Assembly (NCBI RefSeq): GCF_000143415.4
Contig: NW_003314263.1
Coordinates: 622,165 to 686,164, forward strand
Length of the DNA stretch: 64,000 bases
Direction of reading: 5' to 3'
DNA from: Selaginella moellendorffii
Taxonomy: Eukaryota; Plantae; Lycopodiophyta
Shown: piece by piece, positions 6,098 to 25,978 of the stretch
How the letters are laid out: each line of letters begins with the position of its first letter
How positions within the stretch are numbered: the stretch's first letter is position 1
The notes under the pieces: model-generated
What the model was told of the DNA's origin: nothing
What the model saw: the letters and a program-made list of their open reading frames with translations, nothing else
Database searches by the model: none
Program-made: the position numbers and the translations under genes

Positions 6098-7255
6098 TGT
6101 AAGGAACCAACTCACCAAAGTGTCGTAGGCTAAAGGATCCTCGAAAGCATGACCAAAATGACAAAGAGTTCATCGGATGGGACCGAGTCGAAGATCGAGT
6201 CCAAGACCGACTCTGAGACCGAGTTCAAGATAGAGTCTGGGATTGAGTTCGAGGTTGAATCGGAGACCGAGTTCGAGACCGAGTTCGAGACAGAGTCCGA
6301 GATCCAAATCAGGTCCAAGACCGAGTCCGAGGTCGAGTCCGAAGTCGTGTCCGAGATCGGGTTTGAGATCGCGTCCAAGATCACATCCGAGATCGAGTCC
6401 GAGACCGAGTTCGAAGTCGGGTTCGAGATCGAGTCCAAGATCGAGTCCGAGACCGAGTCCGAGTACTAATACAGGTCAAGGGGTGAAAGCCCAAAGTGTG
6501 CGTCTCTCGGGGGGGGGGGGGGCTGCAGGGGCTTCCAAAAGTATGGTAGGGATAGTGAGGTCTAGGAACCAGTCTTGAAGGAACTCTCCAGTGGTGCTTC
6601 CAAACTGACTTGAGGTTGAGACTAGGGTCGAGGGGCCTTGGGTGGGAGTGAGCAGGGACTTGGGTGGTGTCGGAGGGGCCACCCCAAGAAGTGCTCAAGA
6701 GCAGATCCCACTCCCGAAAGGGAAACCGACTACGGTGCTCCCGGCTCATGTGGAGTGGTGTCCCACTTGAGTACCATGCGGCTCATTGGTCCTCGCCCTT
6801 CTTAGGGGCTTGGGCCTTCCTTCGAGATGGAAGTGGGGGGGTAGAGGTACCCATACCGGGCCTTAGGCCACGGTGTTTCACCCCGGCGTCCCGAAGCAAG
6901 TGTTGCACCTAAGACTTGGGATTTAGCGGGTCCCATGATCAGGTCTTGTGGTACCAAGGGGTGTTAGAAACCTGAAGGCTTGGTGTGTTTGGTTGCTTGT
7001 GCCTGCGGGGAGTGTAGCCGAACCATAAGTCCAGTCTAACCTGGGGAGGGGGATTGAGAGAGATTTGGGAATCCGTGGATGGATGGCTAACACTCCATTG
7101 CTCGTGCAATGAGTAGCTGAAACCAAGTAGGCCTAAGTAGGAGCTGGTACCATAGGCGGGAACCTTGGCGAAGGAACTTAGCAAAAGCCAAGGCAGTGTT
7201 GGACGGGTAGACGAGGTAAGCTGGCAAATTGGAAAGGAAAAATTTGTGGCTTACA
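6098..7255 (+). repeat. 3' LTR of the chromovirus, with a degenerate 6/12-bp tandem array at about 6180-6465
   Basis: TG...CA termini, preceded by PPT AGGTGGTGGAGT; 3' end matches 128-407. Confidence 0.93.
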
Positions 7256-9000
7256 CTATGAGGCTAGGACTTTACAAGTTGTCAAATTAACAAAGTCGAA
7301 AAGTTAAATGACTCATGTAAAGTCAAAGAATGGTCCTAAAGGATTGGTGGAAACATTTAGACTAAGGTGTGTTGTACTTTATAAAAGATAGGGAGGATTA
7401 TGAGATCCAAGTATAAGAATAGTGGGTATCTCATTGATGGCAAAATATGCTATACTAAAGTCATGGAAAAAGTGTTCTTGGAAGAAAGCAACTTTGACAT
7501 AGAATTATATATGAACACTATAGTGCAGTATGAGAAACGACTATTATGGTTTTAGCAAAACATAGACACAATTGAAAAGTGTCGTGAGAGTATGCTCGTG
7601 GAGCTAATAGGGTGAAGACTCTAAGTGTCTCAAGGGATGATGTCTTGAAGTCAAGTTTGTTAGTTTATAAAAAACCCTTGCCAAAGGAATCCTAATGGAA
7701 ATAAGATTGGCATAACCTAAGTTGGAAGATATGCAATTCGAATGTATTGACCCAAATAATGATGGAGGTGTGAAAGCATTAGCAATGAGTTGTAGAATAT
7801 GATAACTATGAAGTAATTAAGCAAAGGTTTGGAATAATTTGTTGGAGCTAACTTCCTGAGACTTCTTGGTTAGACAAGAAAGAGGTTAGGTATATATCTC
7901 TTGGGGGATAAATGGCTTATATTGTGATATAGTGAATCAATGTCGTAAAAAGAAATGCTCATTGTCAAAGAAGGCCATTATTAGGACAATTAAACACTTT
8001 AAAACACCCAAAAAGTGGTGTTTGGTATCATGAGGGCATTGGATAAAGCCCAAGGGATTAAGTCCTTAGTAAAAAATGGATAGAAGGTGCTATCTAATAT
8101 TCAAGGTTGCAGTCTATCTGAATTGGACAAAGCGAAAAAGATTTTGGCTTTGCTAGTGATAGGTATACAAAGGTCCATGAGTAGCAATATTAATTCCGGT
8201 GTGTGGAATTACAAGGTGAGCATATCTAGATTGAAGAACCACTCTTTAAGCTATCAAGTAGGTTTATCTCTAAGAATACTTACTAAGGCATGGGAGAAAG
8301 TGCAAAACTATCCTTCTAGCCTATAGAAGAATAATCGAAGGGAATATATAAAGCCAAAAAGTAAGTAGTAAAAGGATAGAATTGAAGTATAAGAGTCAAA
8401 AGGCATAGCAAATAATGGTTATGAAAGTGGGAGTGGAAAATCAAGTGGTGCTCAAATGTATTACTACTGGTAACTGTGGTCCCATGAAGAGTCTAAAATA
8501 TAGAATTACCCATACTAAACCATATGGCAATTAAGAAGCTTGCGAAAGAAGAAGTCTTAGCAAGCTAAGGGACAAAAGTCCCTTCAAGGTTTTTAAAGAC
8601 TATTTTAGGTAAGTTAGTACCTAGAAAGAAATAATTAAAGTGGCAAAGTATAAGCATAGTCTTGAAGTTTGCTATGAGGCGAGGTTATCAAGGTTGGGGA
8701 ATTAGCTCCTAAGTGTTCAAACAGATGGCTTTGAATGACTACCAATATGACAAGGGTGAATGAGTATGGCCTTAGCGTAATGGGCTAATATGTCAGTGGT
8801 ACCTTTGGGTTTAGGTCATGGGATTGGACATATGGAGCACTTGGACCAAATGCAAAGGCTAAGTGGCATGGATGCCATTCACGGGGTTAACATGTCCCAA
8901 GTCAGGAATAGAAGTTATGGAGGTTGTGAGAAAAACTCCTCTTAGTGGTCAAAGGCATAGTTAAATGACTAAACTAAAATGGAAAATTTAGTCGCTTACA
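7256..9000 (+). mobile_element. Old degenerate fragment of the non-autonomous LTR family (internal region plus LTR 3' end)
   Basis: Similar to 30920-31050, 38390-39040 and 42725-43480; ends in GGAAAATTTAGTCGCTTACA at 9000. Confidence 0.8.
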
Positions 9001-11201
9001 CTACCCCTTTGACCATTTGGAGGAGTCTCACTCACGAACTCCATAAATCTTATTCCTGACTTGAGGACATACTAATGTCGTGAATGGCATCTATGCTAGT
9101 CAGCCTTTGCACTTGGTCCAAGTGCTCCACATGTTCGATCCTATGACTGACACCCAAAGGTACCATCGATATATCAGCCTATTATGCTAAGACTATACCC
9201 ATTCACCCTTGTCATATTAATAGTCCAAGACCATCTACATCATAGTCCCATCTTTTAAAGATTGGGCCATCCATCCATGAGTGGTCATCCCTTGACCACA
9301 CCTTAGCACCCTTAAGATGCCTGGAGATATAGGGAACCCTTTCCTAATGTCCCTTCTTCAGCCCTACTAAGTCCCTCTTCATCAACTGTCATGCTGCCAA
9401 CACCACCACTGGGTCACCACTAAATCCCACAGTCCTTTAGAACTTCCTTACCATGTGACCGTATCCTTAATCACTATACCAAAGGATTATTCCTCTTCAT
9501 TTCCACAGTCTGGGACTTTGGGATGATATTTCAAAACACTGTGGCTCTACACAAATCTCGTGGGTACTCTCCCCACCTTCCACCCTTAGGTGCCCTAGCC
9601 ATGTGGCTAAAGTGAGGTTTCGATGAGCCATGCTAGGTAGTGCCACCTACACTTGAATTGGGAGCATCGACCATTTGATCTCCTAGGGGAGCTAGAGTTA
9701 GCTCTTGAACACTTCACCAAGTTACCCCACTTGTCTGTCCGTATTTACTTTAGCCTTGGACTCCTTAGTAGTTATATTATCACTCACTATATAGGTATAA
9801 CCTTCCTTGGTCACACTGGCCTTTCCTAGCCAAATTGGCTCTACTAGAGTCCTCCCCCCTACTATACTTTTGGGGCTCACCAAACCCCTTAGGGTTTGGG
9901 AGACAATCGCTTTAGGCTTTCACCCTTGGACTCGGACTCGGACTTGGACTCGGTCTCAGACTCGAACTTGGACTTGGTCTCAGTTTTGGTCTCGGCCTCG
10001 ACCTTAGACTCCATCTTAGGTCCATCTTAGACTCGGCCTCGGACTCTATCTTGGGTCCATCTCAAACTCCACCTCGGGCTCTATCTTGGGTCCATCTCAA
10101 ACTCCACCTCGAGCTCTATCTTGGGTCCATCTCAAACTCCATCTTGGGTCTATCTTGGACTTTATCTCGGGTCCATCTTAGACTCTATCTTGGGTCTATC
10201 TCGGACTCCATTTTGGACTCCATTTCGAGTCCATCTTGGACTCAATCTCAAGTCCATCTTGGACTCCATCTCGGTCTCCTTTTTAGACCTGTTCATGACA
10301 CTTCCATATATATCATGACATTTGCCATGTGTCAGTCCTTCTTGTGTCCCTTGTTAAAGACTCATTCACTGATTGTTTCATGCTCATTCCTTGAGCATTT
10401 TGTTTAGAGTTCCACTCCTGCTCTCGACTTTCTAAGTCAAAACTTTTGGTCCAAACATGTTATGCTTGTTAAACTTCCACTTTAACCATTACCATATGGC
10501 ACCTTTTTGGCTCCATTTTGGGACTTAGGGATTTATATTTCACAACTCCACCACCTATAGATAAAGTTCAATGTCCTTATTGAACATTATACCATTTTAT
10601 AAAGTAACCCCATCATGGATTACTATTTTCCTTAGGACTAAGCCAATATGTTCAACATTAAAGGCTCATCATGCTTTTCCCACCCTCTAAGGAGCATAGT
10701 CTTTTTAGCTTAGAGACTCATTTGATCACATGTAGTGGTTCTTCCCCTATATTTATTTAGTTCTCGAAAACTTGTTAGAAATACCTTCTTTATCTCAATC
10801 CTATTATTCATTCCTGAGTAATTTTAGCTTCTATCAACATAATCATCACACTTTGGAACTTTAATTTTAACTTCTCAAGTCAATTTCCTAGGTGTCTCTA
10901 ACACCTTGCATTGCACATATTATGCAAACTCCACTTCCCCATCTTAGGAAGTTATTTACTTGAAGGCACCATCATCTTTTCTTCTATTTTGTGCCACAAT
11001 TGGCACTAAGTTCCATTTATCCATAATTTATACTAAAGCTGTCCACAGCCTTATCATTTGGATACCTTGTCGCTCCCTCTCTTGGAGCTTTCACTTTCAC
11101 CAAATTGGAATATTTGGGAATCCATCTTTGGAAATATATTTTTTTTCTCACAATCCGTTAGCATTTAATACATGAGTGTTCATTACCTAACTTTGCCATT
11201 T

Positions 11202-11225
11202 AAGCTCTATTTCGTTAAAGTGGGA
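11202..11225 (+). repeat. Left TIR
   Basis: Exact reverse complement of 25627-25650. Confidence 0.95.
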
Positions 11226-11643
11226 ATTGTCATTATCCCACTTGTAAAATAAGGTTTCCAAACCTTTATATAGTATATAAATATAACAAAATTCAACTGC
11301 ATTGAGGCACATGCCATTTTATTTTAAACAAGGAAATGTCTACTCAATCACTTCTCCTCCCCCTGCCACTGCTTCACCTCTCTCTTCTCCTTGTCATCGT
11401 CGTCCAATTTTTTTCCATCCTTTTAATATTGGCTCAGTTGCTCCGAGTTTAGGTGGAGCCCAAGTCCCCATTCAATCTTTACTTTCCCCTTATTAATAAA
11501 ACAACTTCGTAGACTTCCAATAACATGCTGTAACACTTCTAGTATAATGCAAATCCTCTCAAAGAATTGTCTTTTAATATTAATACAATGGCATGGAACC
11601 CCATGCCATAATAAGTTACATTTTTAAATAAATACATGCCATC

Positions 11644-13934
11644 TCAGATTGTTATTTTTTGCTTCCAACGCCTATACAATAATCTTGGAATTTCATCACT
11701 CTCCACACTATCAGGATTTAAACCCAATAGTAATGCCATCTCTTCTCTAATACGTCCACGCTCATGTTCAGTGGTCGAAGAACCCATCCGGTTGAGTAGA
11801 TTATGGAGATGCGGATAGTGCTTGGCTAGACAATATACATGCCATAAATGATGACTGGTGTCTGTCCGATCAAATGGCTTCTGATATACCGTTCCATCTG
11901 CCATTTGGTTGATTTCTGCAGCCACCTCCTGGACTGGCTGGTTCTCTATCACCATCGCTCCAAGCCGTTTTGCAAGGTCCCCCAGAACATACGGTTTCTT
12001 CTCCCTAGTTTCCATACTGCAAGAGATGGGGTGCACTGCATATGTGTGCGTGTTCGCTGCAGTTTTAATCAGCGAGTCATCGATGATGAGGATTTCACTT
12101 GACCTAGCAGTCCGGTTCATCACTACAGCCTCTGGCTTGACGAAGATGGGCTTGCTACCCCTCACATGGACCATAGTCAAGCAATCCTCCTGCGTTAGGA
12201 AAAAGTCAAATGGTAATATTACTCGCGTCTGATCGTGCATCATCTGTAGCAACGTTAATGCATTGTGGCGCATCATGGATGTCCAAACTCCCAATTGCAA
12301 ATTGAACCCGGCCCTCTGTTTTAAGTGTCGCATGGTCATTATTAGATCCCGCAGTTTCTCCCGTGTGATTAATGTGAATCTGTCTCTTTTGACCAACTTG
12401 CGACCGCAGGCTTTGGAGGGTGCAGTGACATTCGAGGACGAGCCACGCTCATGGGAGAAAAGGACACCGTTCAGATCAAAAACGATATAGTACTTTCGCC
12501 GTGACTCTGAAATGAAATGCGTCAGCATAAAAAATGGTACAAGTCAATTTTACCATCTACAATATTAGCGAATGGTGCTCCCGATGGTCATTCAGAGGGT
12601 TTTGGTCGAGGAAACGTGAAGGGCGGAAATACTCTCCTCTGCAATGTGGGGTCAATCGCATCCGATGGCGTGTGGGCACATGCCCTTTCAGCTGTAGACT
12701 CTGGTACAACTGGCTCAACAGTGGCATGGGGTGGTTCCGATGGTGTGTGATCACACGCCATTTCAGTTGGTGCCTCCGTTGGCAAAGTGGACATGACCGA
12801 ACAGGCAGCAGGGGCGGTGTAGGGAGGTTTCAACGGCGCGTAGTCAGACGATTGGGCACACGTTGAGTCCGTTGGAAATGAGGATACAACCGGCTCGGCA
12901 GCTGGGGCGGCCTCATGCGGGTCCAATGGCACCTGGTCACCGTCAGTTGGATACGTGGACAAGATTGACTCAGTGGTATGGGCAGCATCAAGTGGAGCGT
13001 GGTCAGTTTGCTTGGCGTTGATATGGATAGTAGCCTCCACCAGCTCTAATGACTCTTGCAGGCAAGTAGAGTCCACTGGCAGATCCATATGCATGTCCAA
13101 ATATCTCCCTTCGATTGAGATGGTATCCTCCTTACTGGCTACTAAAAACAAACTCATTAGCACATTGAATCGACTATACTGTATTTACCATCAACTGCTA
13201 TTGAGGAACTAGGACCGATATCACTTGGGCGCACTGCTGATTCTGAAGGATTGGACATACGTTTCAACCCTTGCTTGGCACTATCCTTCCTCGACACTAA
13301 AGGCTAGAGTTTGTATCTTAATTCAACTGAATAATCTCTACTTACCATTTGCTTTGCAACCTACATGGACAATGTTAGAAATGGTAAAAGGTTAGGAATG
13401 GATGTACTATTATTTACCTGATGGTTTGTCTTGTATGACCTTCCTCCGCTACTCTTTGGCCACCTCAGGCTGGCCATCGTCGTCATCATCGTCGTCGTCA
13501 TTATTGTGATCGTCACTATTGTGAGGACCATCCAAGTCCTCTTCGTCCTCCTCTTCGTCCTTCTGCTCTTCCTGCTCATTATCTTTTTCTGGCTCCTCAT
13601 CCCCCTCCTGCATTTCTTCCATAGGCTGCTCAGGCTGGATGGCTTGTTCTTCCAGGACCATCTTGGGAAAATCATCTGGCCGAGTTTCCATCTCAAAATA
13701 CAAGACATCCATAGCCTGTTTTAGTGCGTGACCTAGGACCGTATCCTCACCCGACTGCCTTAACATAGTTTCTGCACGTTCTTGCACCCTTCGAAGACGA
13801 CGAGATGAGAAAAACGTGGCCCTGACTTGAAAAGCATCCCTCATCCATTGTACCTCTCCAGTGAGATTGGGGAAGGGGAGTCCGCCATAGGAATCTGAGT
13901 CAGGAGGTGGTGACCGCGAGGCATTACCTATCAT
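11644..13934 (-). CDS. Transposon cargo: multi-exon gene with an acidic/low-complexity N-terminal part and a C-terminal FCP1/NIF-like HAD phosphatase domain (last exon 11644-12506 is open)
   Basis: YYIVFDLNGVL, GVWTSMM, FFLTQEDC, KPIFVK and ILIIDDS motifs; predicted 47-nt intron 12507-12553 joins it in frame to ORF 12588-13163 (one TGA). Confidence 0.7.
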
Positions 13935-16900
13935 CTTTTCGTTGCCCTTCTTCCTTTTCGAATCAAACGCCTCTGATCCCGAAGACTGTCCAACGTGCTT
14001 TCGCTTTTATGACCACTGTCAGTTTGAGCTTGGCTGGTGCTTGCCTGTTTTGCCTTTGAAGAAGTGTCTCCTACAAGGAATGGCATGAGACCACACGCCA
14101 TTGCAAATATAATTTGTACCTCCTTTTTTCCTATTGCTTGTCTGTTTGTCCTTCTTCGACGTGCCACCAGTGCGTTTTTCAGTCCTCGTGTCTGAATATT
14201 CACAACGATCTATAATCAAAATGGCGTGAGGCCTCACGTGACCTTACCTTGTGCAGGTTGTGAGCTCGGCCCAACAGTAGCTGTTAACGCCGTTTCAGCA
14301 TCTGGGGGTGGCCACGCTCCTGCATACAGAGCTTGTGAGATAACATTTAAACTTAAAGTGCATACTCACCAGGTTCGCAGAGAAGATACTGTTTTTATTT
14401 GGCAACTGTAATTATATGCTTCATTGAAGTCACCTCTTCAATGGAGTTTGTCACCGCAACACACGGGACACCCTTGAGTAGTGCGGCTCGAAAGAATAGT
14501 CCGCCGTAGTTGTACTCGACAACGCATTTGCCCTTGGAGTCGGAAGCAGGTGCTATTGCGTTGAAGACCCAGCTGAGCATTTCCCATGCTGCACCTGGAG
14601 CTTTCTCTGGATTCGAAAGCTCCATAGCCGTCTTCAGTTCCTCAGGCACGGGTAAATTGACCTCCCTCAGATCAATTCGATCGGCCTTGTCGAACAAAGC
14701 TGGGAAGTCACTCCAGTCCCACTTTGCTGCAGGACCAATAACAAGGGCGAGTGTGAAGATGCGGACATTCGTCGGTATCTTCTTCTTAGCCATTATCCCA
14801 TGGATCTCCTACATCTCCTTGCCTTTCAACCGACCCTTCACCTCGTTCAAGGCCTTCCAGAACTTGTGATAGGATTCGGAGTCGTAGATCATATAGTGGA
14901 CTGAAGATTCCACCTCCGCAAGTCCCACCATTAAGTCAATGATGGAGCTGACTTCGTCTGCATGAGTGATCTCCTCGTTTGTAAAGTCCATCACACAAAA
15001 GATGTTCTTGACTTGCTCATCTCCGCGGGAAACGATGCTCCTCCACCTTTGATCCTCATCCGAATTCACGTATACCCGGTAAGGTTCTCGATAGGCCTCT
15101 ACTGCGGGGTCGAGCTGTTTCTGAAGCCGGCGGTCGACATCCCTCTTAATGAAATTTGGATACTGATCCAACTTCTCAGCTTTACTTTTCGTGGCATCCC
15201 GCAGCAGATCGATGAACTTGGGGGCCCCCTTCACGTAGTCGTCGATGTCTTCATTTGACAACTCCAGCTCTTCCATCATCTCTTGCGTGGTGTCGATGCT
15301 CACCCTCTCCACGGCCACTTGCTCGAAGATCCAATCCTTCAATAGCGCATGAGCTCTCAGAGTCGTGCACAAGTCCTCGTATGTCACAATATGGCCGGGA
15401 GTCATTTTGGTCTTGTTGAAGACTACCTCACCACGTAGAAGAGCATTAGCCATTGTCAGAAGGTCGTCGTCGTCTAGAGACCGCGAGAAACGCAAGGCGT
15501 TGAGCTTCAAATCATTGGGCTTCCGGCCGTCCTCCACACCCATTGAGTTTAGCAACTCCCCGTCATGGTACCTCCTCAGCACATCTACCCATTTGTCAAA
15601 AACAACTTTTGTCGTGAGTAGAATGTTATGGATGCTGAGTGTGTCATTGACCCCCAGTGTTTTCGAGAGAAGACTCGAGAATTCCTGCAATGGAAATGGC
15701 GTGAGGCCACATGCTATGCCACATGCAACGAGGCTTACCTGCCAGGCGCTAGTTGCTAGTGCACGTCCTTGTCCTGGTTTTTGTGGCTTCTTCAGTTGAA
15801 CCCAGAGCTTCCGTGTTCGTGCCAATGTCTCGTGCAGACTCGATTTGTAGCACGTTTCTTGCTTGACATTTTGCGCATGGGAGATGGATATAATAGATCG
15901 GAGGGGCGAGTTGCCTTTTATCAGGCGGACAACTTTTGTCTTGAAGACTTTCTTCACCTCCTCGCCCACCATAATATCCACAACTATCTCTTGCATCGCC
16001 AAGCTAGAATGCTGCCCGGAGATGGCATAGAACCGGATGTTCTGATCGTCCAACACCTTCCTATTGATCAAGTCTAGAAACCTCGTCTCGCCCTTCATTG
16101 TTCGGTAGTAGGGGATCACAGCTGCGATGTCGGGTGTTACTGGACTTGCCAGCATCTTCTGCTGCAGTTTCTCCACCCACTCATCAGATACTAGCCTGTG
16201 GTTGTATTTGCTTTGGATGTCGATACGGCTCACGTCGATTGTATATACTTTGTTGGAATAGTAACAAGTACTATTATCTGCGATGATTTTTGCTGCCTCT
16301 TCTTGCTCTTTCTGCTCTTTGCGGCTCTTCTTTTTGGTGGGTGTAGTGTTCGAACCCGAGGCAATGGCATCACCGAGTAGCTTCTTTTTTGGAGCTGCAG
16401 GAGAGTCGGACGTCGGCTTGAGCTTGACCACCCTTTTCTGCTTCGGGGTAGTTTCCAGATCGACCCCCTTCCCCTTCGCTTCGCGAACTGGAGGCACTCT
16501 CAATGGCTCAATGTTGGAATATAGTTTTTGAACATCGCCGTAGGTGAGGTCCGTGGATTCCATGTGATCTTCATAGACCCCCAGCGTCTTTGAAATTGTG
16601 GGCCTCCTGGACAACCTCTCCCTAGCTCCCTCTAGGAATTCCTCATAGCCGCTGCCCCCCTCCGGGAAGCCGCTAGGATGTGCAAGGTGGATCTTGAAGG
16701 CAGACGCTGTCTCTACCACAAGTGCCAGTCCATATTCTTGCATAGAACTGCATGGAGTGTCTGTCACTTGGATGAGGATCCCCATGCATTCTTTTCTCCC
16801 ACCATCTGTGTTGTACAGCCTCAGATCCTCACCTTCCATCCCGAAAGTCCAACTGGTGAGCTCCTCCCCCTTCTCTGCATCCACATTGACAGTGGCTGGA

Positions 16901-17283
16901 AGAAGAACGCAATTCCTTGCCTGTTCAGAAATGCACAACAATTAGAGCTGACAGATGAAAAGCTTGAGGCCACACGCCATTCACCACTGCATCAGATGTC
17001 TTGAGGCTGCATCCTAAGATGGCGTGAGGCTACACGCCATCTGTAACCGGACTGCACTCGAGAGCCCAATCGGTGCATGCCAATGTTGCTACTGAATGGC
17101 ATGTGGCCTCATACCATTTTCTACTTGGCCTAAAAGACTTACCATTTGAAGCCGAATGGAGGCCGTGACAATCGAGGCTGGACTCGCTGGCGAATGTGCA
17201 CTGTGTGTGCAGCGGATCGTAGCAGCAAGGCTACTCTGCCACTTAGAGTTGGAGAGTGGCGCTGAAATCTCCCGGGACGCCAA
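13931..17283 (-). pseudogene. Transposon cargo: ParB/Srx-like domain plus degenerate N4/N6 DNA-methyltransferase-like domain, multi-exon, with one or two premature stops
   Basis: IDVSRIDIQSKYNHR..WVEKLQQKM..FYAISGQHSSLAM (ParB-like, about 15860-16250); NPEKAPG..GKCVVEYNYGGLFFRAALLKGVPCVAV (resembles a beta-class MTase C-terminus); TAG at 14809 is in frame with ORF 14395-14793; introns 15685-15738, 14320-14369, 14192-14247 and 14071-14119 keep the frame to the stop at 13931; 5' end uncertain. Confidence 0.65.
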
Positions 17284-18013
17284 GTGGGCTGCGTGTGGGT
17301 GGTGGAGTGGGCGGCGGAGTTGGCGGCGAAGTTACAAACTGGGTGTGTTTTGAAGTGGACGCCGATGCACACGAGCGCGATACGAGCGCGAGTGTGATGC
17401 AAGCGCGAGTGGACGCCGATGCACACGAGAAACCTGTAGAGAAGGTAGATGAGCGCGAATGTGAGCGTGATCGCGAGTGGGAGCGCGATGCGAGCGTGAG
17501 TGTGCGATTATTTCTTGAATGGCGTGGGGCCGCATGCCATTTTCAAGGGCACATAGGAGTATATTCCTAGAATATTCTGACACGCGCAAGATTTTTTTGA
17601 GTTTTCTGGAGATCCAACCGTTAAATCGCAACTAGATTTTACAGAATGGTATACAATGTCTCTCTTGATGACCCTGCAAAGAAGCATCTCGATCAGACAC
17701 CACATGAGACCACACGAGCCTTACAATGTTTCAGGGGCATTTGCCATAGATCCGACCGTTATTTTGCTCCAAAATTTTACAGTTTGGTGTGCATTGACCT
17801 TTCCATCGACACTGCAAAGGGACATCACAATCAGATGCGAGATCACAAGAAACTAACTTCACTAACTCTGGTTTCACCAAGATTTACGTAAGAAGTTATG
17901 AAATGAAAGGACCCTCTCTATTGAAATGTGTTTATGGTCCTAGGGGCATTGTGACATATCAAAGGATTTTGCATCAAGTTCTGTATTTGCATGTTTATCA
18001 AGCTACTGAATTG

Positions 18014-18040
18014 CTAAACCCTAAACCCTAAACCCTAAAC
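18014..18040 (+). repeat. Interstitial plant telomere repeat / telo-box cluster, about 4 units of CTAAACC
   Basis: CTAAACCCTAAACCCTAAACCCTAAAC between the divergent transposon genes. Confidence 0.85.
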
Positions 18041-19472
18041 ATGTGGCAAATGCTGCGTGAAGAAAGATGCCCTTTCTGGGCAAATGCTGTAAGAGGCAGA
18101 TGCCGAGTAGATGTATCTCAGGCTAGCGAAGGGGACAAACGAAAGCTAGCTATAAACATGACGGGATGCAAATAGATTACTAGGCTGGTCCTGTGAAAAT
18201 CAAAAACCATAATTGAAAACATTGAAAATGCAAAAAGAAAGGTTTATAATATTTTTGAATTTTAAGCAACCAAAGGAATGTAAGTAGGGCATGTGTTTGT
18301 AAGTTTAAAAATGCCTCAACCACTTAAATTCCCAAGTAAATAAAGCTGTTTCTATTTTTGGTACAGATAAACTTTATAGCGTGTGGGCTCATGCAATTTT
18401 GAACCCAAAAATGCACCAAAAAACGCTCGACTAGCATTATTTTTTGAATGGCGTGTGGCCTTATATTGCCATAAATGGACGTACACACACAACATAATTA
18501 TTCCTTTACACGGCGAATAATCTTGGCGCGGATTGCTAACATGGCATGGGAAAGTTCGAATCACTGACATGGCACAGCTGGATCGAGGCAAGGACATGAT
18601 GTGACAAAGTTCAACCTCCGACAGCAAAGTTTAGAAGCTACTTAGTTTGAAATTTGTCAGAGGAATCATAAGATCTGGTTTGTCAGAGGATTTGATGTGA
18701 CGTTCAAGCGTGTGTTATTTTTGAATTCTCGAACTCATTCCTAGGTCTATCATTTTTGTGCGCCGTGTTCTTGGTTCCGCTGAGCACAGTGAGCGCTGCT
18801 TGTGTAAGCGGCGTTGTGGGCTGTGGTTTATGCGTCTACGAGCGGTTGCGGCATTGCGAGCGCCATTGCAAGCGGCAGTTTATGCGAGTGGCAGTTTGTG
18901 CGAGCGGTGCTACGAGCAGTTGCGGTGTTGCGAGCGGCGCTACGAGTAGTTGCGGTGTTGCGAGCGGCACTGTCTTTGGTGTGGCTACCGCTTCCTCTTG
19001 ATATTCGGCACTTGTGCTTCCTGGTATATTCACCATGGAATGGCTTAGGACCACATTTAGAAATGGCATGAGGCCACATGCCATCTTGGGCCCTTGCAAT
19101 TTCATGGCTAGCGTATTGTCATGTATGTTTTTACTTGCCTGCAGCTGTGTGTATATCAAGATGGCATGAGGCCTCATGCCAATTTTGTGAATGCGAAATT
19201 TCACGTGGGTGTCAATAGCATGTTTGAATAATGGCATGTGGCCTCATGCTATTGAGGTTGTTTGGTATGTTATGATTTAGGCCATTCTCCAATCATTTTT
19301 TGTATGGTCTTAACTTCTTTTCTGCACTTTCAGAATGGCCTTCAGGGTTGGGGAAAAGGTTTACATTTTGAATGGTGGGAAGAGAGTTGCAAAAGGGACC
19401 CTTGTGTCTATGGATCGGAACTTTGTTATACACTGTCAAAGGCTTGGGGAAGGTAATGCTGCTGTATCAGTA

Positions 19473-20901
19473 TGTGAGACACAAAATCCCTAGGCCCCAA
19501 AGTGGAGCCGGAAGGGCGCCACATGGTAGTGGCCGAAGCGAGAGCCAAACGAGCGTAACACGTTTGGACCAAAAGCTCCGACTTGAAAAATCAAGAGCGG
19601 GAGTGGAACTCCCAACGAAGTGCTCGAGGAACGAGCACGAAGCGAGCAAAAGGCGAGGCTCCAAAAAGGGACCCAAAAGGGCCAACACATGACACGTGGG
19701 AGTGTCCGAGATGGACCCGAGTTGGAGTCCGAAGTGGAGTCCGAGATGGACCCGAGTTGGAGTCCGAAGTGGAGTCCGAGATGGACCCGAGTTGGAGTCC
19801 GAAGTGGAGTCCGAGATGGACCCGAGATGGAGTCCGAGATGGAGTCCGAGATGGAGTCCGAGGTGGACCCGAGATGGACCCGAGTTGGAGTCCGAAGTGG
19901 AGTCCGAGATGGACCCGAGATGGAGTCCGAGATGGAGTCCGAGATGGAGTCCAAGGTGGACCCAAGATGGACCCGAAATGGAGTCCGAGATGGAGTCCGA
20001 GATGGACCCGAGATGGAGTCCGAGATGGAGTCCGAGACCCAGTGTTGGGTGATGAGCTGCCCACTAGGAAGTCCAAGACTAGAGTGAACACAGACCGACA
20101 AGCGGGGTAGCTTGGTGAAGTGTTCAAGAGCCGGCTCTAGTTCCCCCGGGAGATCGACTGGCCGATGCTCCCAGTCCAAGTGTGGGTGGCACTACCTACT
20201 TGGATACCTGGTGTGGCTCAACGGAACCCGCTCTAAGCCCATGGCTAGAGCACCTAAGGGCAGAAGGCGAGGAGAGTACCCAGGTGGCTCGCGTAAGGCC
20301 ACGGTGTTCCGAAATGTTGTCCCAAAGGCCCAGACTGTGGAAAGGAAGAGGAGCAGTCCTCTGGGGTAGTGACCAAGGACACAGTCGTGTGGGGAGGAAG
20401 TCCCAGAGGACCGTGGGACTTAGTGGTCGGGCCTGTGGGTCTCGATCCAGTGGCAGTGTTGGCAAACACGGCCAGGGGCAGAAAGGGACTTAGTGGGGAC
20501 TGACAGAGGGATATTGGGGAAGGCTATTCCCCTTGTCGGTGGGCATCCTAAGGATGCTAAGGAGTGGATCTGAGATGACCACTCACGGATGGTTTACCTA
20601 GTCTTGGAGAGCCAAGACGGTGATGCATGTGGTATTGGACTACCAGTGTGGCGAAGGTGATTGGGCATGGCCTTAGCATAACGGGCTGCCATGTCGGTGG
20701 TACCTTTGAGTGTCGGTCATGGGATCGGACACGTGGAGCACTTAGACCAAGTGCAAATGTTGAGTGGCATGGATGCCATTCTCGGGGCTTGCAAGTCCCA
20801 AGTCCTGGATTGGACTTATGGAGGTTGTGAATGAGACTCCTCCAAGTGGTCAGAGGTGTGGTTAAGTGACTAAAGTAGAATGGAAAATTTAGTCGCTTAC
20901 A
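19473..20901 (+). mobile_element. Solo LTR of the non-autonomous family inserted in the transposase
   Basis: TGTGAGACAC...GTCGCTTACA; TSD CAGTA (19468-19472 and 20902-20906). Confidence 0.96.
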
Positions 20902-22619
20902 CAGTAGAGACTGTCTTCGATGGGAATGTGGTCGCTATTGAACGAGGAGAGATGGTCATCAGGGTAAATGTTGTTGTTGCCTTGAAAAATCTTCAGAAGA
21001 AAGCAGATGTTGGGGACAGCGCAAGTGCAACGCATGTTCCCTCCGTGGATCTTAAGAACCGTGCTACATGGATTCAGGCAAAGGTGTTTCTAAACAACCC
21101 CGAGGAGGAGGTGGTAGCTGAGGGCTTAGCCATAGTTGTCGATCCAAGAGATGCGGTTGCTAATCAAGAATTGGGCTGGGATGATATTGGAGTTGCGATT
21201 TTAGAGGTTGTTGACACAGAAGAAAACAGTCTGACTATTAGAAGCATTGTGCGGTGGAAATTGAGGCACTTAGTGTTTGAGAATGTGAAGGATTCACAAT
21301 CAAACACCACTACAACTGATGACAGAACATCTCTTCATGGGAAAAGAAAGTACACCTTCCTAAAGCGCAGCCAAGGGGATCTGAGCAACGAACCGAAAAG
21401 ACAGAAAATGGCGATGGAGGTTCGAATGGTCTCGACAGTTGCTTGTTGCAAGAAGAGGTGCTGTCAACATGCTGATTGGGATGCTATTGAAGAGGAGAGA
21501 GCAAGATACAAGACATTGTCCTGGAAGGCAGCTCGCAATTTTGTGTATGAGGCATTACGGTCATCTGTTGATGCTTCAGAACATCAGGTGGGGGGCATGG
21601 TCTTCCAGAGGGGTTTGGTCTGCATGAAGGCATGGAGAATCATTTATGGAGTCCCTCGAACCACATTCTACAGAATCAAAACTGAGTTCGAGGATCAAAG
21701 GGTTCAACAGGCAGTCCATGGGAACGACGGTACGCACAAAACCAGGGGTCATGTTGTATATGGAGAGGCAATCTTCAAGAGGTTTGTCGAGACATGTAGC
21801 GAGCAGCAACCACATAAAACCCGCCTCTTGGAAGATGGAACACGAGACACCCAATGAGTTCTCCCTTCCATGTATACCAAGGGGGCCATATTGGAAGATG
21901 TGAATCGGGAACTCCAGAGTAATGGCTACAGGAAGCTGAGCCAATCTAGATTTAGTAGATTGTGGAGCAACAGGTTCAGGGATGTGAGTATAGGAAAGTA
22001 CTCCAGCTTTTCAAAGTGTGACGAGTGCACTGCTATCAAAATGGCTTTGTCGAAGAATTCTTGCAGCGCTCAAGAGCGAGAGACGTTGGTTAGAAGGCGG
22101 CTCGACCACAACATCGAGCAGAGAAGCTGCAAGACTGCATATTATCATAACAGGATTCTCTCCATGGAGAGACCTGGCTCTTACCTCTACATCATCCACG
22201 ACAAAATGGACCAGAAAAAGACGTGCTTACCTCGACTCAATCCTGCCCCCAAGGCAATCTCTTCATCCATGCAGCTGCCTGTGTCTCTGTTTGGCATAAT
22301 CGCTCATGGGCATGGTGCCCAGAACTATGGGAACTTCTTTGTACCTCTATGGGGTGGCGGGGGTGCAAACATGATGATTGCGTTCCTAGCAAAACACTTA
22401 AGGTCTCTGCAAAGTGCGTAGACTGAGCTGAACGGCCAACCCTTGCATAAGGCCCTTGTCGATCGAACCCCATACAGGGTTCAGCTGGAGGAGGAGCAAA
22501 GGCTTGCAGTATCGCGTGGGGCCCCATGCCATCCCAGTGAATATGTTAGCCATTAGATTGTAGGGTTATCACGTGAGGCCTCATGCCATTCCGATGAGGC
22601 TGGTCGCCCGGTGAATGCA

Positions 22620-23001
22620 CAGCCTCATCCAAACGAAGCAGAATCTCAAGGAAGTTCTTGCGGCCGATGTGGCCTTCCACCCCATCTTCTGCTCCAAACA
22701 GACAATGCTGGCAGTGAGAACAAAAACATGTACGTCTTCGCGTACTTGGCGATGCTTGTTGCCAAAGGCATATTTGAAACGGTTACACTTGGCTTTCTCA
22801 TGGTTGGGCACAGCCTCATCCAAACGAAGCAGAATCTCAAGGAAGTTCTTGCGGCCGATGTGGCCTTCCACCCCATCTTCTGCTCCAAACAGACAATGCT
22901 GGCAGTGAGAACAAAAACATGTACGTCTTCGCGTACTTGGCGATGCTTGTTGCCAAAGGCATATTTGAAACGGTTACACTTGGCTTTCTCATGGTTGGGC
23001 A
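22620..23001 (+). repeat. 191-bp tandem duplication inside the transposase catalytic core
   Basis: CAGCCTCATCC... starts at 22620 and 22811; GCACA microhomology at the junction; causes a frameshift. Confidence 0.92.
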
Positions 23002-25626
23002 CACTCATGAAGACGTTGATGCCATGTTCAGTCACCTGGCAGAGTCCCTCCGGCGATCCAATGTCCTCACCCTCCCACAACTCTACGATGAATTCCAAAA
23101 TTGCATCAAAGGCACTGTTGAAGCTGCACTTGTGACAGAGGTTCCAGACTTTAAGGGGTTTGTAAGAGGCTACATCAGGGACGGATCCGAAACGCTGATT
23201 GGCCACTCCAAGCCTCTTCAGTTTCATTTCAGCATGCGTGACGGTGCTCCAGTGATGAGGTACAAGATGAGAGAATGGGACACAGTGTGGCTGCCAGTGG
23301 ACGGCATTGAACTCTTCAAGAGAGATCCCATAACTGGGGAACCTATGATTCCTCAGGGTTCCCCACGGCCGATGCACCCGGATGGACTCAAAGACCAGGA
23401 AAGTATAGTGGCCGGGATTAGACAGCATATTGCCTTCTGGAAGAGGGGGTTAGTGTTTGGTGGAGAATCCTATTTTCAAAGGTGCAAGCCTTTGATCGAA
23501 TACTGGGAGAAGATTATATTTGCTATCCAAAATGGTCCGGTTGTATATGAAGAATTGGAAGAGTCCTTTTGGCCAGAACCCAGAGCACCAGATAGTAGCG
23601 GAACAATGTCCTCTGGAAATGCAGTGACAGATAACGATGTTGAGGATCACTATTGTGGGCCAAGGAACAAGAAGCCGGATTCAGCATTCAATCCAGTATA
23701 GGTCTGCAAAGGAATGGTCGTGCTTGTCAGACCCAGTAATAAAAAACAAATGATATGGGTGGGGCGCTGCATCACTGATGCAGAGGAGGACGCGGAAACT
23801 AACTCCTTCAATGTAACTGTGGAGTGGTTCAAGCCAAGTTCCGGATATACGAAGGATTGCCTAGAAAAGAGATGGGTGCTGAATCCAAGGGATCCCAGCA
23901 TGAGCATATCGGTGGATAATGTTGTGCATGGTTGGATGAGTGCCACCATCACCTTGCCAGACCATGCAAGAGATGCAGCAAGAGCATTCATAACCCGAGT
24001 TTAAGGTGAGATTCATTAATATTCCTTTACTAAGTTTCTAATGTATTTTATTTCAAGGTGAACAATCCGAATCTGAATCAGAGGAGGTGTGATAGCATGT
24101 GGCCTTACGCCATTCCTAGGTGAGATGATACAAATAACAAGTATAAATTCTTAGTTGTTCTAGCAAATCTTACTTAAAGTTCAAGGTGAACAAGCCGAAT
24201 ATGAATTCATCGGATTGTTATAACAAATTGCGAGGTGATGGCATGAGGCGATACGCCATTTGAGAGTGGTAGCCATTCCTATATGAGGTGAGTGAAATAT
24301 TTATTAGAAATACCTCATTCAATTGTGCACTTCTAAGTCTTGGTCCACTCAGTATTGTTTGCATGTTTTTATTTTAATTCTTTCTCTAAAATGTTATTTA
24401 GCATGTGGCTTCATGCCATTGCTCTCCACAATCATGCATTGAATTTTTCTATCCTTGCATAATACTTCTCCATATATATAGCATGTGCGCACATGTGATA
24501 TGGTTCATTAGGCCTGATATAGTGTGTGAGGTAAAACAAAGATGATGTGACATATGCATTTACCAATCACACGTGCATAAATCTAATAATATGGCGTGTG
24601 GCCCATATTAATGGCACATAAACCCATATTGTGGGCTTACATGCTTTATGTACCATCATTCCCTTGCAGCGTGTGTGTTGGTTTCCTTTTATAACACAAC
24701 GAACTCCATATTTTAGGGTGAAGAGCGTTCTCATGGCAAGCACAAAATCTGTAAGTGAGGCAGAAAAGGAGACGGAGAAGGAGATAGGTGAAGATGTAGA
24801 ATATATAAGTCTTCCAAACTCCCCGTACTATACTCCAGGTGATCATTTTTCTGAACAAACGGCAACATTAACAACTATCGAGAACGCCCCAGTAACGTTA
24901 GAGACAACAATCCAAAGCAAAACAACTGACCTGGAGAAGGATGATAGTACCGCTAAGAGTACCAAAAAGGAGGTGTCCACTAGCGCTTAGGCTTATAATG
25001 GCGTGTGCCCTCATGCCATTTACTTAATCACCAAATACCTTTTTCCCTTTGCACTAATATATCTTAATACCGGTCTGAGAAATAGAATGGCATGTGCCCT
25101 CAGGCCTTTTACTAAATCACCTTTGAAAGAAATGCAAGCCTCTATGTCGTAAAAAAAAGGTACTAGAGAAATTCCTTAATAATATGAATGTTATTTAGTT
25201 TCATGAAAATACACTAAGGGTCAAATGAGTTAAATGACTTCTCCAGACTAGCAATGCCTCTTGCTATACCTTCACAATTAGATTCGTTAGAAAAAGATAA
25301 CATTGAATAATATCTAAATGTTCTCACCATTAAGTTATATGTCTGGCTAATAGGAATGATGTTCATCTTGGAAAGCTCACCACACGCTCAATGAACAAAC
25401 AAATAGTGTGTGCACGCATGCCATCGCTCTTCTTTAGCTTCAGATTTGGCTTGTTCACCTTGACAATGAGATTTATTATACAACTAGATGGACTCAGTCT
25501 GGACACAAAGTCACCGCGCTAGTCACCATGCCCCAGATATGTCTAGCCCCTGGACAAAAAACATATAATTTCACGTCATTTTCAAATACTTGAAAATTTG
25601 TACCTAGTCCCATTTTACTGAATAAA

Positions 25627-25650
25627 TCCCACTTTAACGAAATAGAGCTT
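25627..25650 (-). repeat. Right TIR
   Basis: TCCCACTTTAACGAAATAGAGCTT followed by TSD ATTT. Confidence 0.95.
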
Positions 25651-25978
25651 ATTTGGATTCCTTCTAATAATTTCCATAGCCCAATTTTGGCCACTAGTTT
25701 TTTACTCATATTCTTTAATTGTTGCACCAAACAATATAAGATCACTACCTTCATCCTTGAGGTATTTTTTTGGTTCCATAACAAAAGTTTTTCTTTGCCA
25801 AGTTTATGAAGTATTCATCCCTAATAAGTCTCTTTAGCATTTTCTATTATGGACTCTATCCACAACCCAATTTTGTGACCCTCCCATATGTCTTTCTTAG
25901 ATATTACTTTCTTGGACTCACCATATTAACACCGCTTATTTCCTTTATGTGTCTTTCCCAATTAGTCACCTTGACTAA

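What the first reader, a model, noticed from the sequence alone, without database searches (positions are those of the whole stretch)
11202..25650. Giant Sola-like DNA transposon carrying a ParB/MTase-like gene, an FCP1-like gene and its own array of palindromic sites: candidate self-recognition or anti-silencing system
Seen: perfect 24-bp TIRs and an ATTT TSD delimit a 14.4-kb unit. It holds a DDD transposase (+), divergent intron-containing cargo genes (-), and about 25 copies of one 22-bp palindrome that I see nowhere else in the window. Known: Sola elements make 4-bp TSDs (AWWT for Sola1) and are usually described with a transposase only; bacterial ParB loads at palindromic parS sites and spreads; ParB-MTase fusions occur in phages and bacteria; Arabidopsis VANDAL transposons encode VANC proteins that bind motifs dispersed through their own element and counter silencing. 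Inference: the ParB/MTase-like protein binds the palindromes as a dimer and coats, marks or protects the element, possibly with the FCP1-like protein acting on Pol II CTD state.
Basis: partly seen in the sequence, partly recalled or inferred. Interest (0 to 1): 0.93.

Follow-up and report, generated by a model that had tools for sequence, protein, structure and literature searches.

The report
Sola-like transposon with ParB-like partner gene
This is a real but dead 14.4-kb cut-and-paste transposon in a non-seed plant. Besides its transposase it carries a gene with a bacterial ParB DNA-binding fold, a phosphatase-like gene and 25 private palindromes. This design was already reported in algal transposons in 2025, and which protein binds the palindromes is still open.

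Summary
Perfect 24-bp TIRs and an ATTT duplication bound a 14,449-bp element. It has a DUF7869-type transposase on + and intron-bearing accessory genes on -. All 25 copies of a 22-24-bp palindrome lie inside the element, and none overlaps a coding block.

The ParB claim passes its own refutation test. An alignment-based AlphaFold model of window 15850-16254 matches ParB N-domains (Z 10.2, rmsd 2.2 A over 98 residues), followed by a ParB/KorB-like helical DNA-binding part. The canonical GERR arginine motif reads SGQHS.

The methylase-like part is supported only weakly and lacks the DPPY catalytic motif. The phosphatase-like gene belongs to the NIF family, but its motif reads DLNG, not DxDxT.

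This copy is dead. The transposase is broken by a 191-bp tandem duplication, the accessory gene has an in-frame stop, and the copy shows C-to-T decay.

The design is not new. A 2025 paper describes Ectocarpus Sola1-1_Ec32 with a ParB-like/methylase gene opposite the transposase, and red-algal elements with ParB-domain genes beside inverted-repeat arrays. This scan has also reported the same family many times on other pieces of this genome.

New here are the land-plant setting, the degenerate methylase, the conserved NIF-like partner and the intron/UTR-dispersed sites. Relatives carry different palindromes, but I could not separate transposase from ParB-like protein as the binder.

The parts
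11198..11201 (.). Left target-site duplication ATTT
   Evidence: Read directly; same 4 bases at 25651-25654.
11202..11225 (+). Left terminal inverted repeat, 24 bp
   Evidence: Exact reverse complement of 25627-25650.
25627..25650 (-). Right terminal inverted repeat, 24 bp
25651..25654 (.). Right target-site duplication ATTT
11647..12543 (-). NIF/FCP1-like (HAD phosphatase-like) ORF. Its motif I reads DLNGV, not DxDxT.
   Evidence: Pfam NIF E 3.9e-4, 20.6 bits, just under the 21.8 cut-off. The fern counterpart P0027 residues 802-977 scores NIF E 7e-17 and has the same DLNG.
13452..14006 (-). 185-codon open frame with an acidic tail between the two accessory genes. Exon or separate gene; function unknown.
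   Evidence: no Pfam match.
14398..14793 (-). C-terminal piece of the MTase-like domain (motif-I-like VVEYNYGG...AALL). It is in the same frame as the 710-aa ORF.
   Evidence: Alignments A3 and A4. Profile against PDB: best natural hit M.RsrI at motif I, E 0.21. hhalign against PF01555 methylases: P 6.7e-4, probability 27%.
14809..14811 (-). In-frame TAG that interrupts the ParB-like/MTase-like gene in this copy
   Evidence: Frame continuity is shown by the coordinates, and homologues read through this region.
14827..15093 (-). N-terminal piece of the MTase-like domain. The motif-IV position reads VMDFTNEE, so DPPY is lost.
   Evidence: Alignments A3 and A4. HMM of A4 matches ORF residues 617-705.
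15343..15840 (-). Helical middle part that superposes on the HTH DNA-binding domain of ParB, KorB and pNOB8 ParB. It contains the 54-nt intron.
   Evidence: VIA-align: about 200 residues aligned to 5k5d, 5k5a and 8qa9, Z 8.2-8.6. Atlas neighbours are ParB_N + HTH_ParB/KorB clusters.
15685..15738 (-). 54-nt GT..AG intron made largely of one palindrome (site at 15696-15717)
   Evidence: The 18 residues it would encode are absent from homologues and have pLDDT 30-38 in the model.
15850..16254 (-). ParB/Srx-fold N-terminal domain (ORF residues 230-364). Family signature ISGQHS.
   Evidence: AlphaFold2 with a 23-row alignment, pLDDT 80-92 in this part. Foldseek: nearly all of the top 40 hits are ParB, Noc, KorB, Srx, SbnI or PadC. 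VIA-align: Z 10.2, rmsd 2.2 A over 98 residues to 7bm8_A.
16959..19252 (.). Region between the head-to-head genes, holding 9 of the 25 palindromes (16959, 17019, 17096, 17519, 18376, 18448, 19063, 19161, 19231)
19372..20180 (.). Nested unrelated repeat: a ~120-bp unit also found at 10 or more other places in the window, followed by a 12/23-nt tandem array
20880..22421 (+). Transposase, N-terminal exons (Cys-rich and HTH-like part; first catalytic Asp in IIHDKMD)
   Evidence: Same motifs in the Calypogeia relative L013.
22511..22589 (.). Two palindromes between conserved transposase coding blocks (predicted intron)
22617..22998 (+). Perfect 191-bp tandem duplication inside the transposase exon with the second catalytic Asp (QTDNAGSENKN). 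It shifts the frame.
22919..23701 (+). Transposase C-terminal catalytic part (GHTHEDVD), Pfam DUF7869
   Evidence: E 5.1e-30. 33 homologues, including liverwort proteins.
11296..11609 (.). Two palindromes near the left end, downstream of the NIF-like ORF
12665..12761 (.). Two palindromes just upstream of the NIF-like ORF
   Evidence: At 12685 and 12744 the family majority restores the consensus.
14080..14242 (.). Two palindromes downstream of the MTase-like exon
24092..25424 (.). Seven palindromes in the 3' region after the transposase (24092, 24238, 24398, 24478, 24998, 25087, 25403)

Best explanation
Shown:
- This is a decayed copy of a high-copy, Sola-like (probably Sola1) cut-and-paste transposon of a non-seed land plant. 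The repeats match Selaginella.
- The family carries a conserved accessory module on the strand opposite its transposase. The module is a protein with a ParB N-domain, a ParB/KorB-like helical DNA-binding part and a degenerate beta-class DNA-methylase-like domain, followed by a NIF/FCP1-like gene.
- About 25 private 22-24-bp palindromes sit only in its non-coding DNA: introns, UTR-like ends and above all the region between the head-to-head genes.

Inferred:
- The palindromes are docking sites for a dimer of an element-encoded protein.
- The most likely binder is the ParB-like protein. It would act as KorB does on its dispersed palindromic operators in plasmid RK2: it recognises the element's own DNA and tunes transcription or chromatin of both genes.
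- The methylase-like and phosphatase-like parts would serve as binding or adaptor modules, not as enzymes.
For: Anatomy.

ParB fold and HTH-like part.

Module conserved:
- Fern Adiantum P0027 aligns over ORF residues 246-625 (E 4e-18) and continues into a NIF domain (E 7e-17).
- P0035 and P0036 end with the motif-I-like exon instead.

Sites are under constraint:
- None of the 25 overlaps a coding block (P < 5e-6).
- At all three sequence differences listed inside palindromes, the family majority restores the consensus.

Sites go with ParB-family genes elsewhere:
- Contig L003 encodes a family member and has 26 copies of a different palindrome, including a 13-copy tandem array just upstream of the ORF.
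- Red-algal Plavaka elements, which have a different transposase, have inverted-repeat arrays beside a ParB-domain gene.

Established knowledge: ParB, KorB and Noc bind palindromes as dimers. KorB and Noc structures are among the best fold matches.
Against: - There are no binding data.
- The transposase has its own Cys-rich/HTH-like N-terminus and could be the binder.
- In relative L014 all 11 palindromes lie in and around the transposase gene (2887-7951), while the probable ParB-like gene (11.2-15.8 kb) has none.
- In Calypogeia L013, 9 palindromes flank the transposase and no ParB-like gene was seen within 10 kb, though that flank is broken by a retrotransposon.
- Earlier notes of this scan report relatives without the accessory gene that keep palindrome arrays. 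I could not confirm or refute this.
- The arginine motif of CTP-dependent ParB clamps is missing.
- No RNA evidence was found.
Confidence: 0.42

Rival explanations
1. The palindromes are transposase-binding sites. They would be subterminal and internal sites that help assemble the transposition complex or regulate the transposase gene. The ParB-like protein would do something else, such as chromatin or copy-number control.
For: - Every relative of the DUF7869 transposase with enough flanking DNA has its own palindrome next to the transposase gene: L014 has 11 sites and L013 has 9.
- In L014 the sites surround the transposase and not the probable ParB-like gene.
- Sites cluster toward both ends of the window element.
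- The transposase N-terminus has a Cys-rich motif and an HTH-like stretch.
- Several earlier notes of this scan reached this reading.
Against: - The palindrome has no similarity to the TIR.
- Sites are spread through the whole 14 kb and are densest between the two genes, not near the ends.
- L003 has an array directly upstream of a ParB-family ORF, with no transposase in 6.9 kb.
- Plavaka elements with another transposase family also pair ParB-domain genes with inverted-repeat arrays.
- The relative I could inspect best (L014) seems to have a diverged ParB/MTase-like gene, so a relative truly lacking the accessory gene was not shown here.
Confidence: 0.3
2. The ParB-like/MTase-like protein is an active N6-adenine or N4-cytosine DNA methylase. 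It is targeted to the palindromes and marks the element epigenetically, as proposed for the algal proteins.
For: - The domain order ParB then beta-class methylase is that of phage and plasmid ParB-methylases, for example M.PhiCh1-I in alignment A5.
- There are weak but position-specific matches to the TQKP and motif I region.
- Protein-language-model neighbours include N6_N4_Mtase clusters at 0.85-0.86.
- The Ectocarpus protein is described with a predicted N4C/N6A methylase domain.
Against: - The DPPY position is degenerate in every member seen: VMDFTNEE, VLDAAHG, VCDSANG, VLDATTD, IADLRRC.
- The acidic residue after strand 2 is not conserved.
- There is no Pfam hit at E <= 0.1 in any member.
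- hhalign probability is only 27%.
Confidence: 0.08
3. The palindromes act at the RNA or structural level, or are bound by a host factor. Examples are hairpins that define tiny introns or UTRs, or small-RNA precursors. They would have no dedicated element-encoded binder.
For: - All sites are in transcribed-looking non-coding DNA.
- One site makes up most of a 54-nt intron.
- Sites often come in pairs or triplets 57-160 bp apart.
Against: - Perfect palindromes without a loop are poor hairpin substrates.
- Each family having a different palindrome of the same size fits a co-evolving protein better than a host factor.
- Sites also occur outside any gene, near the ends.
Confidence: 0.1
4. The accessory genes are accidental captures of host genes with no role for the element.
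For: S. moellendorffii has a single-copy, host-like gene with the middle and MTase-like parts, lying between ArfGap and VQ genes.
Against: - The same ParB-like/MTase-like then NIF order is seen in a fern.
- The family is high-copy in the organism's DNA runs.
- The analogous module occurs in brown-algal Sola1.
Confidence: 0.04

Closest known systems
Sola1-1_Ec32 of the brown alga Ectocarpus (Genome Biol 2025, PMC12477816)
   Same: A giant Sola-type DNA transposon. [quoted passage not shown] The authors already propose that such proteins bind and modify their own transposon.
   Different: - Here the host is a land plant and the element is 12-14 kb, not 21.5 kb.
- The methylase motif IV is lost.
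- A NIF/FCP1-like gene follows the accessory gene.
- About 25 private palindromes are dispersed in introns and UTRs; the paper's text has no match to 'palindrom'.
- Direct sequence homology to the Ectocarpus protein was not tested.
Plavaka accessory gene PAG3 of the red alga Bostrychia (bioRxiv 10.1101/2025.02.11.637652; Curr Biol 2025)
   Same: A ParB-like N-terminal domain encoded by a giant transposon, with arrays of inverted repeats beside the gene. The authors propose self-binding.
   Different: The transposase superfamily differs. The partner domain is a 2OG oxygenase, not an MTase-like domain. The arrays are tandem and adjacent to the gene, not dispersed through the element.
KorB and its dispersed palindromic operators on plasmid RK2; ParB-parS; Noc-NBS (bacteria)
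   Same: ParB N-domain followed by an HTH domain (fold matches 8qa8/8qa9, 7bm8, 7nfu). A dimer recognises palindromes scattered over one replicon, many of them in promoter regions.
   Different: This is a eukaryotic transposon. The GERR arginine motif for CTP is replaced by SGQHS. There is no ParA partner and no evidence for sliding or spreading.
Phage and plasmid ParB-methyltransferase fusions (e.g. M.PhiCh1-I; PF01555 family)
   Same: The same domain order, and a likely evolutionary source of the accessory gene.
   Different: Those enzymes keep DPPY and FxGxG. The plant family has lost DPPY and matches PF01555 only at motif level.
VANC anti-silencing proteins of Arabidopsis VANDAL transposons
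   Same: By analogy only: an accessory protein proposed to bind short motifs dispersed in its own element.
   Different: The protein fold and the transposon superfamily are unrelated. No homology was tested or expected.
Sola2-Fanzor chimeric elements of Dictyostelids (Mob DNA 2013, PMC3627910)
   Same: Sola elements with AT-rich 4-bp duplications (ATAT, AAAT, ATTT) that carry a second gene.
   Different: The second gene there is Fanzor/TnpB, not ParB-like.

Membership tests
Sola superfamily of DNA transposons (Sola1) | 4-bp AT-rich target-site duplication | tested here: met
   ATTT on both sides. AWWT-type duplications including ATTT are reported for Sola2.
Sola superfamily of DNA transposons (Sola1) | Terminal inverted repeats | tested here: met
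   Perfect 24-bp TIRs.
Sola superfamily of DNA transposons (Sola1) | RNase H-like DDD transposase homologous to curated Sola1 transposases | tested here: inconclusive
   DUF7869 at E 5e-30. Conserved IIHDKMD / (Q)xDN...NKN / GHTHEDVD blocks are shared with liverwort relatives. No Sola profile or Repbase sequence was on hand. Assigning DUF7869 to Sola1 rests on earlier notes and on analogy with Sola1-1_Ec32.
ParB/Srx superfamily | ParB N-terminal domain fold | tested here: met
   Z 10.2, rmsd 2.2 A over 98 residues to Caulobacter ParB; Z 9.2 to PadC; Srx and SbnI at Z 6-7. Foldseek top hits are nearly all from this superfamily.
ParB/Srx superfamily | HTH DNA-binding domain after the N-domain, as in ParB, KorB and Noc | tested here: met
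   About 200 residues aligned to pNOB8 ParB-N and KorB, spanning model residues 14-330 (Z 8.2-8.6, rmsd 4.7-5.3 A). Atlas neighbours carry ParB_N + HTH_ParB/KorB. Confidence in the helical part is moderate (pLDDT 60-90).
ParB/Srx superfamily | GERRxR arginine motif of CTP-binding ParB clamps | tested here: not met
   The family signature is (S/D)GQH(S/T), with invariant G and H. It resembles DGQHR-type relatives but lacks the Arg.
ParB/Srx superfamily | Specific binding to a palindromic site | not testable with these tools
   Needs EMSA or DAP-seq.
Beta-class N6A/N4C DNA methyltransferases (Pfam PF01555) | Significant sequence or profile match | tested here: inconclusive
   No Pfam hit. Profile against PDB: M.RsrI E 0.21, aligned exactly at motif I. 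hhalign against 7 true PF01555 enzymes: P 6.7e-4, probability 27%.
Beta-class N6A/N4C DNA methyltransferases (Pfam PF01555) | Catalytic motif IV (D/S/N)PPY | tested here: not met
   Only the Asp is kept; PPY is lost in all members.
NIF/FCP1/SCP family of HAD phosphatases (Pfam PF03031) | Domain match above the curated cut-off | tested here: inconclusive
   Window ORF scores 20.6 bits against a cut-off of 21.8. The positional counterpart in the fern scores 61.9 bits. BLASTP of window ORF against fern protein gives E 6e-4.
NIF/FCP1/SCP family of HAD phosphatases (Pfam PF03031) | Catalytic DxDx(T/V) motif | tested here: not met
   DLNGV in the window and DLNGL in the fern. The nucleophile Asp is kept and the second Asp is Asn. 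Placement against the Pfam consensus is from my own knowledge of the motif.
Sola1 elements with a ParB-like/MTase accessory gene (Sola1-1_Ec32 type) | Accessory gene with ParB-like and methylase-like domains on the strand opposite the transposase | tested here: met
   The methylase-like part has weak support only.
Sola1 elements with a ParB-like/MTase accessory gene (Sola1-1_Ec32 type) | Sequence homology of the accessory protein to the algal proteins | not tested

The most novel reading that the evidence does not exclude
Giant eukaryotic transposons from brown and red algae to land plants share a ParB/parS-like self-recognition system of bacterial or phage origin. A ParB-fold protein would load as a dimer on dozens of private palindromes in the element's own introns, UTRs and promoter. 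Together with a catalytically altered CTD-phosphatase-like partner and a dead methylase module, it would shield the element from silencing or control its transcription.
Probability: 0.2. Interest if true: 0.85.

Novelty: new variant of a known kind. Interest (0 to 1): 0.5.

Why it matters
If the ParB-like protein binds the palindromes, this would be a bacterial-style DNA-binding protein with its site array working inside eukaryotic chromatin on behalf of a selfish element. The parts (protein and a 22-bp site) are well defined and easy to test in vitro.

It would extend a module just reported in algae to land plants. It would also add two unreported features: a conserved NIF/FCP1-like partner, and placement of the sites inside tiny introns.

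It also shows that a whole ParB-fold family (lycophytes, ferns and unnamed environmental eukaryote contigs) is invisible to Pfam and to sequence searches against PDB.

As it stands, this copy is dead and the kind is already known, so the value lies in the comparison, not in the discovery.

Tried and rejected
1. Single-sequence AlphaFold model of ORF residues 209-710: pLDDT 34, unusable.
2. Word-indexed homology searches with the 710-aa ORF and with alignment A2: nothing, or only two fern proteins.
3. Pfam, NCBIfam and PDB sequence searches of the ParB-like protein and its relatives: no significant family.
4. Protein-language-model neighbours pointed to DUF3723, the Starship accessory gene, at 0.96. 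No paper in the library holds both DUF3723 and ParB. The shape search of the Atlas returned ParB_N/HTH_ParB, DUF6551 and GmrSD_N but no DUF3723. I dropped it as unsupported.
5. Fern loci: no DNA was served, so the gene neighbourhood could not be checked.
6. Read laying: only contigs, no spliced forms and no RNA evidence.
8. Contigs L004 and L005 have no recurrent palindromes. They have long uninterrupted reading frames and may be transcripts, so this says little.
9. Search for a relative that clearly lacks the accessory gene yet keeps palindromes. L013 is interrupted by a retrotransposon. L014 seems to carry a diverged ParB (DGNHR)/MTase-like gene, though the hhalign P values are weak (0.035, 0.004, 0.042). 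The outcome is inconclusive.

Full report
**Observation**

The element is real and its borders are exact.
- AAGCTCTATTTCGTTAAAGTGGGA at 11202-11225 is the perfect reverse complement of 25627-25650.
- ATTT flanks both ends, at 11198-11201 and 25651-25654. The unit is 14,449 bp.
- The pattern ATGGCRTGNGGCCNCAYGCCAT gives 21 matches at up to 3 mismatches, all inside the element, against none in 100 shuffles.
- A symmetrised weight matrix finds 25 sites above the best shuffle score. All lie between 11296 and 25424 and none lies in the other 49.5 kb. The consensus is the 24-bp palindrome AATGGCRTGAGG|CCTCAYGCCATT.
- None of the 25 sites overlaps a homology-supported coding block, although these blocks make up 40% of the element (0 of 200,000 random placements did as well).
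- Nine sites lie between the two head-to-head genes. Sites often come in pairs or triplets 57-160 bp apart.
- One site forms most of a canonical 54-nt GT..AG intron at 15738-15685 on the minus strand. Its 18 in-frame codons are missing from all homologues and were modelled at pLDDT 30-38.

**State of this copy**

The copy is dead.
- The transposase is split by a perfect 191-bp tandem duplication (22617-22807 / 22808-22998) that shifts the frame inside the exon with the second catalytic Asp.
- The accessory gene has an in-frame TAG at 14809-14811.
- Contigs of DNA runs of the same organism show the family to be very abundant: 26,683 contig pieces in one run. Low-depth runs still assemble the element.
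- This copy differs from the family majority mostly where the majority has G or C and this copy has A or T (60 of the roughly 75 substitutions tallied per run in table 1). That is the pattern of C-to-T decay of methylated cytosines.
- Three of the listed differences fall inside palindromes (12685, 12744, 17113). In all three the family majority restores the palindrome consensus.
- No RNA run and no spliced form was found.
- The stretch 19372-20180 is a nested unrelated repeat. It is also present at ten or more other places in the window and, at 85-90% identity, in a Selaginella moellendorffii locus. A joint in the reads also carries plant-type telomere repeats.

**Transposase**

- The C-terminal ORF matches Pfam DUF7869 (E 5e-30).
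- Its relatives include proteins of the liverworts Calypogeia and Riccia and many unnamed eukaryotic contigs.
- The blocks IIHDKMD, QxDN...NKN and GHTHEDVD are shared with the Calypogeia relative.
- The 4-bp AT-rich duplication fits Sola.
- I had no Sola profile, so 'Sola1' rests on these features, on the analogy below and on earlier notes.

**The ParB claim**

Sequence methods see nothing: Pfam, NCBIfam and PDB all gave no significant match. An exhaustive HMMER scan of 1.84 billion representatives gave only 15 weak hits, the best at 4.5e-8. These hits define a small family:
- unnamed Logan, ENA and JGI contigs;
- two S. moellendorffii proteins;
- several proteins of the fern Adiantum nelumboides.

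The N-terminal domain alignment shows a conserved core with the signature ISGQHS.

AlphaFold2 with a 23-row alignment gave pLDDT 80-92 for this domain.
- By Foldseek, nearly all of the top 40 PDB matches are ParB, Noc, KorB, sulfiredoxin, SbnI or PadC.
- VIA-align gives Z 10.2, rmsd 2.2 A over 98 residues to Caulobacter ParB. The aligned model residues 22-156 correspond to window 15850-16254.
- About 200 residues align to pNOB8 ParB-N and KorB, covering the following helical DNA-binding part (Z 8.2-8.6).
- The Atlas shape search returns ParB_N + HTH_ParB/KorB clusters, DUF6551 and GmrSD_N.

The GERR arginines that hold CTP in ParB clamps are not present, so CTP-driven clamping is unsupported.

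**Methylase-like part**

- All members share a C-terminal block of the form hhh(D/E)hxxGG...A(L/A)L...h(V/I)x(E/N/S).
- A profile of it finds the beta-class adenine methylase M.RsrI as its best natural PDB hit, aligned exactly on motif I, but at E 0.21.
- I built an alignment of E. coli YhdJ and six phage PF01555 enzymes, one of them the true ParB-methylase fusion M.PhiCh1-I. hhalign matches the TQKP-motif I-strand 2 region at P 6.7e-4, probability 27%.
- Language-model neighbours include N6_N4_Mtase clusters.
- Three weak signals point at the same motif of the same family. I rate a degenerate beta-class methylase fold as probable but not shown.
- At the motif-IV position only the Asp survives in every member (VMDFTNEE, VLDAAHG, VCDSANG, VLDATTD, IADLRRC), so base methylation is unlikely.

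**Phosphatase-like gene**

- The window ORF scores just under the NIF cut-off.
- Adiantum P0027 (1125 aa) aligns with the window protein over residues 246-625 (E 4e-18) and then runs into a clear NIF domain (E 7e-17).
- Its sister models P0035 and P0036 end instead with the motif-I-like exon.
- So the order ParB-like/MTase-like then NIF-like is conserved between a fern and this plant, and the module is not an accidental capture.
- Both species read DLNG where the family has DxDxT. The nucleophile Asp is kept and the second Asp is Asn, which suggests altered or lost catalysis.

**What is already known**

- The 2025 Ectocarpus TE paper describes the 21.5-kb Sola1-1_Ec32. [quoted passage not shown] - The Bostrychia genome paper reports a ParB-domain accessory gene in Plavaka elements with inverted-repeat arrays beside it.
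- Sola2 elements with a Fanzor gene were described in 2013.
- This scan has also met the same family many times on other pieces of this genome.

**Who binds the palindromes?**

Relatives carry different palindromes of the same size.

| Locus | What it encodes | Palindrome | Copies and position |
|---|---|---|---|
| L014 | DUF7869 transposase | CATCGGGGGATCCCCCGATG | 11, in and around the transposase gene |
| L013 (Calypogeia) | transposase | TCACGAACCATGGTTCGTGA | 9, around the transposase |
| L003 | member of the ParB-like family; no transposase in 6.9 kb | TCGCAACGC-G-GCGTTGCGA | 26, including a 13-copy tandem array with 26-bp period just upstream of the ORF |

- L014 also seems to encode a diverged ParB-like (FFICDGNHRRLAW) and MTase-like protein on the other strand. 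The three hhalign matches are weak, and no palindrome lies in that gene.
- I could not find a clear relative that lacks the accessory gene yet keeps an array, as earlier notes claim. I also could not exclude one.
- Points for the ParB-like protein: the fold, the loop-less palindromes typical of ParB, KorB and Noc sites, the L003 array, and the Plavaka precedent with a different transposase.
- Points for the transposase: its constant association with the arrays, and the L014 layout.
- My estimates: 0.42 for the ParB-like protein, 0.30 for the transposase, and the rest for other readings.

**Verdict**

The finding is real and well delimited.

New elements are the land-plant host, the loss of the methylase and ParB nucleotide motifs, the conserved NIF-like partner with DLNG, and the placement of the sites in tiny introns and UTR-like DNA.

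Interest is 0.5. Novelty: new variant of a known kind.

Noticed in passing
window 22617-22998: A perfect 191-bp tandem duplication inside the transposase exon. At 100% identity it is either very recent or an assembly artefact.
   Followed up: partly
window 19372-20180; also near 28471, 32659, 38260, 41415, 42606, 45332, 47316, 53240, 53900: A ~120-bp repeat unit followed by a 12/23-nt tandem array is nested in the element. It recurs across the window and is 85-90% identical to S. moellendorffii L002:8584-8709.
   Followed up: partly
window about 31187, 36946, 39170, 39771, 51732, 63470 (partner site 26 nt further on): Another repeat family carries a fixed pair of palindromes, GAATGGCATCCATGCCACTC and TGCACTTGGTCCAAGTGCT. 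The first shares the ATGGCAT half-site with the transposon's palindrome. These places match L002:8708-9222 at 65-70% identity.
   Followed up: no
L003:2142-2506: Thirteen copies of TCGCAACGCGGCGTTGYGR in a head-to-tail array with a 26-bp period, directly upstream of and running into the start of a ParB-like family ORF. Thirteen more copies are dispersed over the 6.9-kb contig.
   Followed up: partly
L004:3318-3941: A SET-domain ORF (Pfam E 4e-5, above the cut-off) lies downstream of a family member on a 5.3-kb contig. This recalls the N6-methylase/SET accessory gene PAG2 of red-algal Plavaka elements.
   Followed up: no
L001 and L002:10001-11425 (S. moellendorffii): A 451-aa protein (P0003/P0021) has the middle and MTase-like parts (IVEYGCGG) but no ParB domain. 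It sits as a single gene between ArfGap and VQ genes on two scaffolds, without palindromes. It may be a domesticated derivative.
   Followed up: partly
window 11600-17599 against DNA runs: This copy differs from the family majority mainly by A-for-G and T-for-C (about 60 of the roughly 75 substitutions tallied per run). This is the signature of deamination of methylated cytosines.
   Followed up: partly
window 14812-16941 (protein): Protein-language-model features place the protein next to DUF3723, the conserved accessory gene of fungal Starships (score 0.96). The shape search did not return DUF3723, and I found no paper linking DUF3723 to ParB.
   Followed up: partly
My three profiles and a motif scan found nothing significant there.
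   Followed up: partly
L014:1217-1270 and 10821-10836: Plant-type telomere repeats (AAACCCT)n occur in inverted orientation on either side of the palindrome-bearing transposase region.
   Followed up: no
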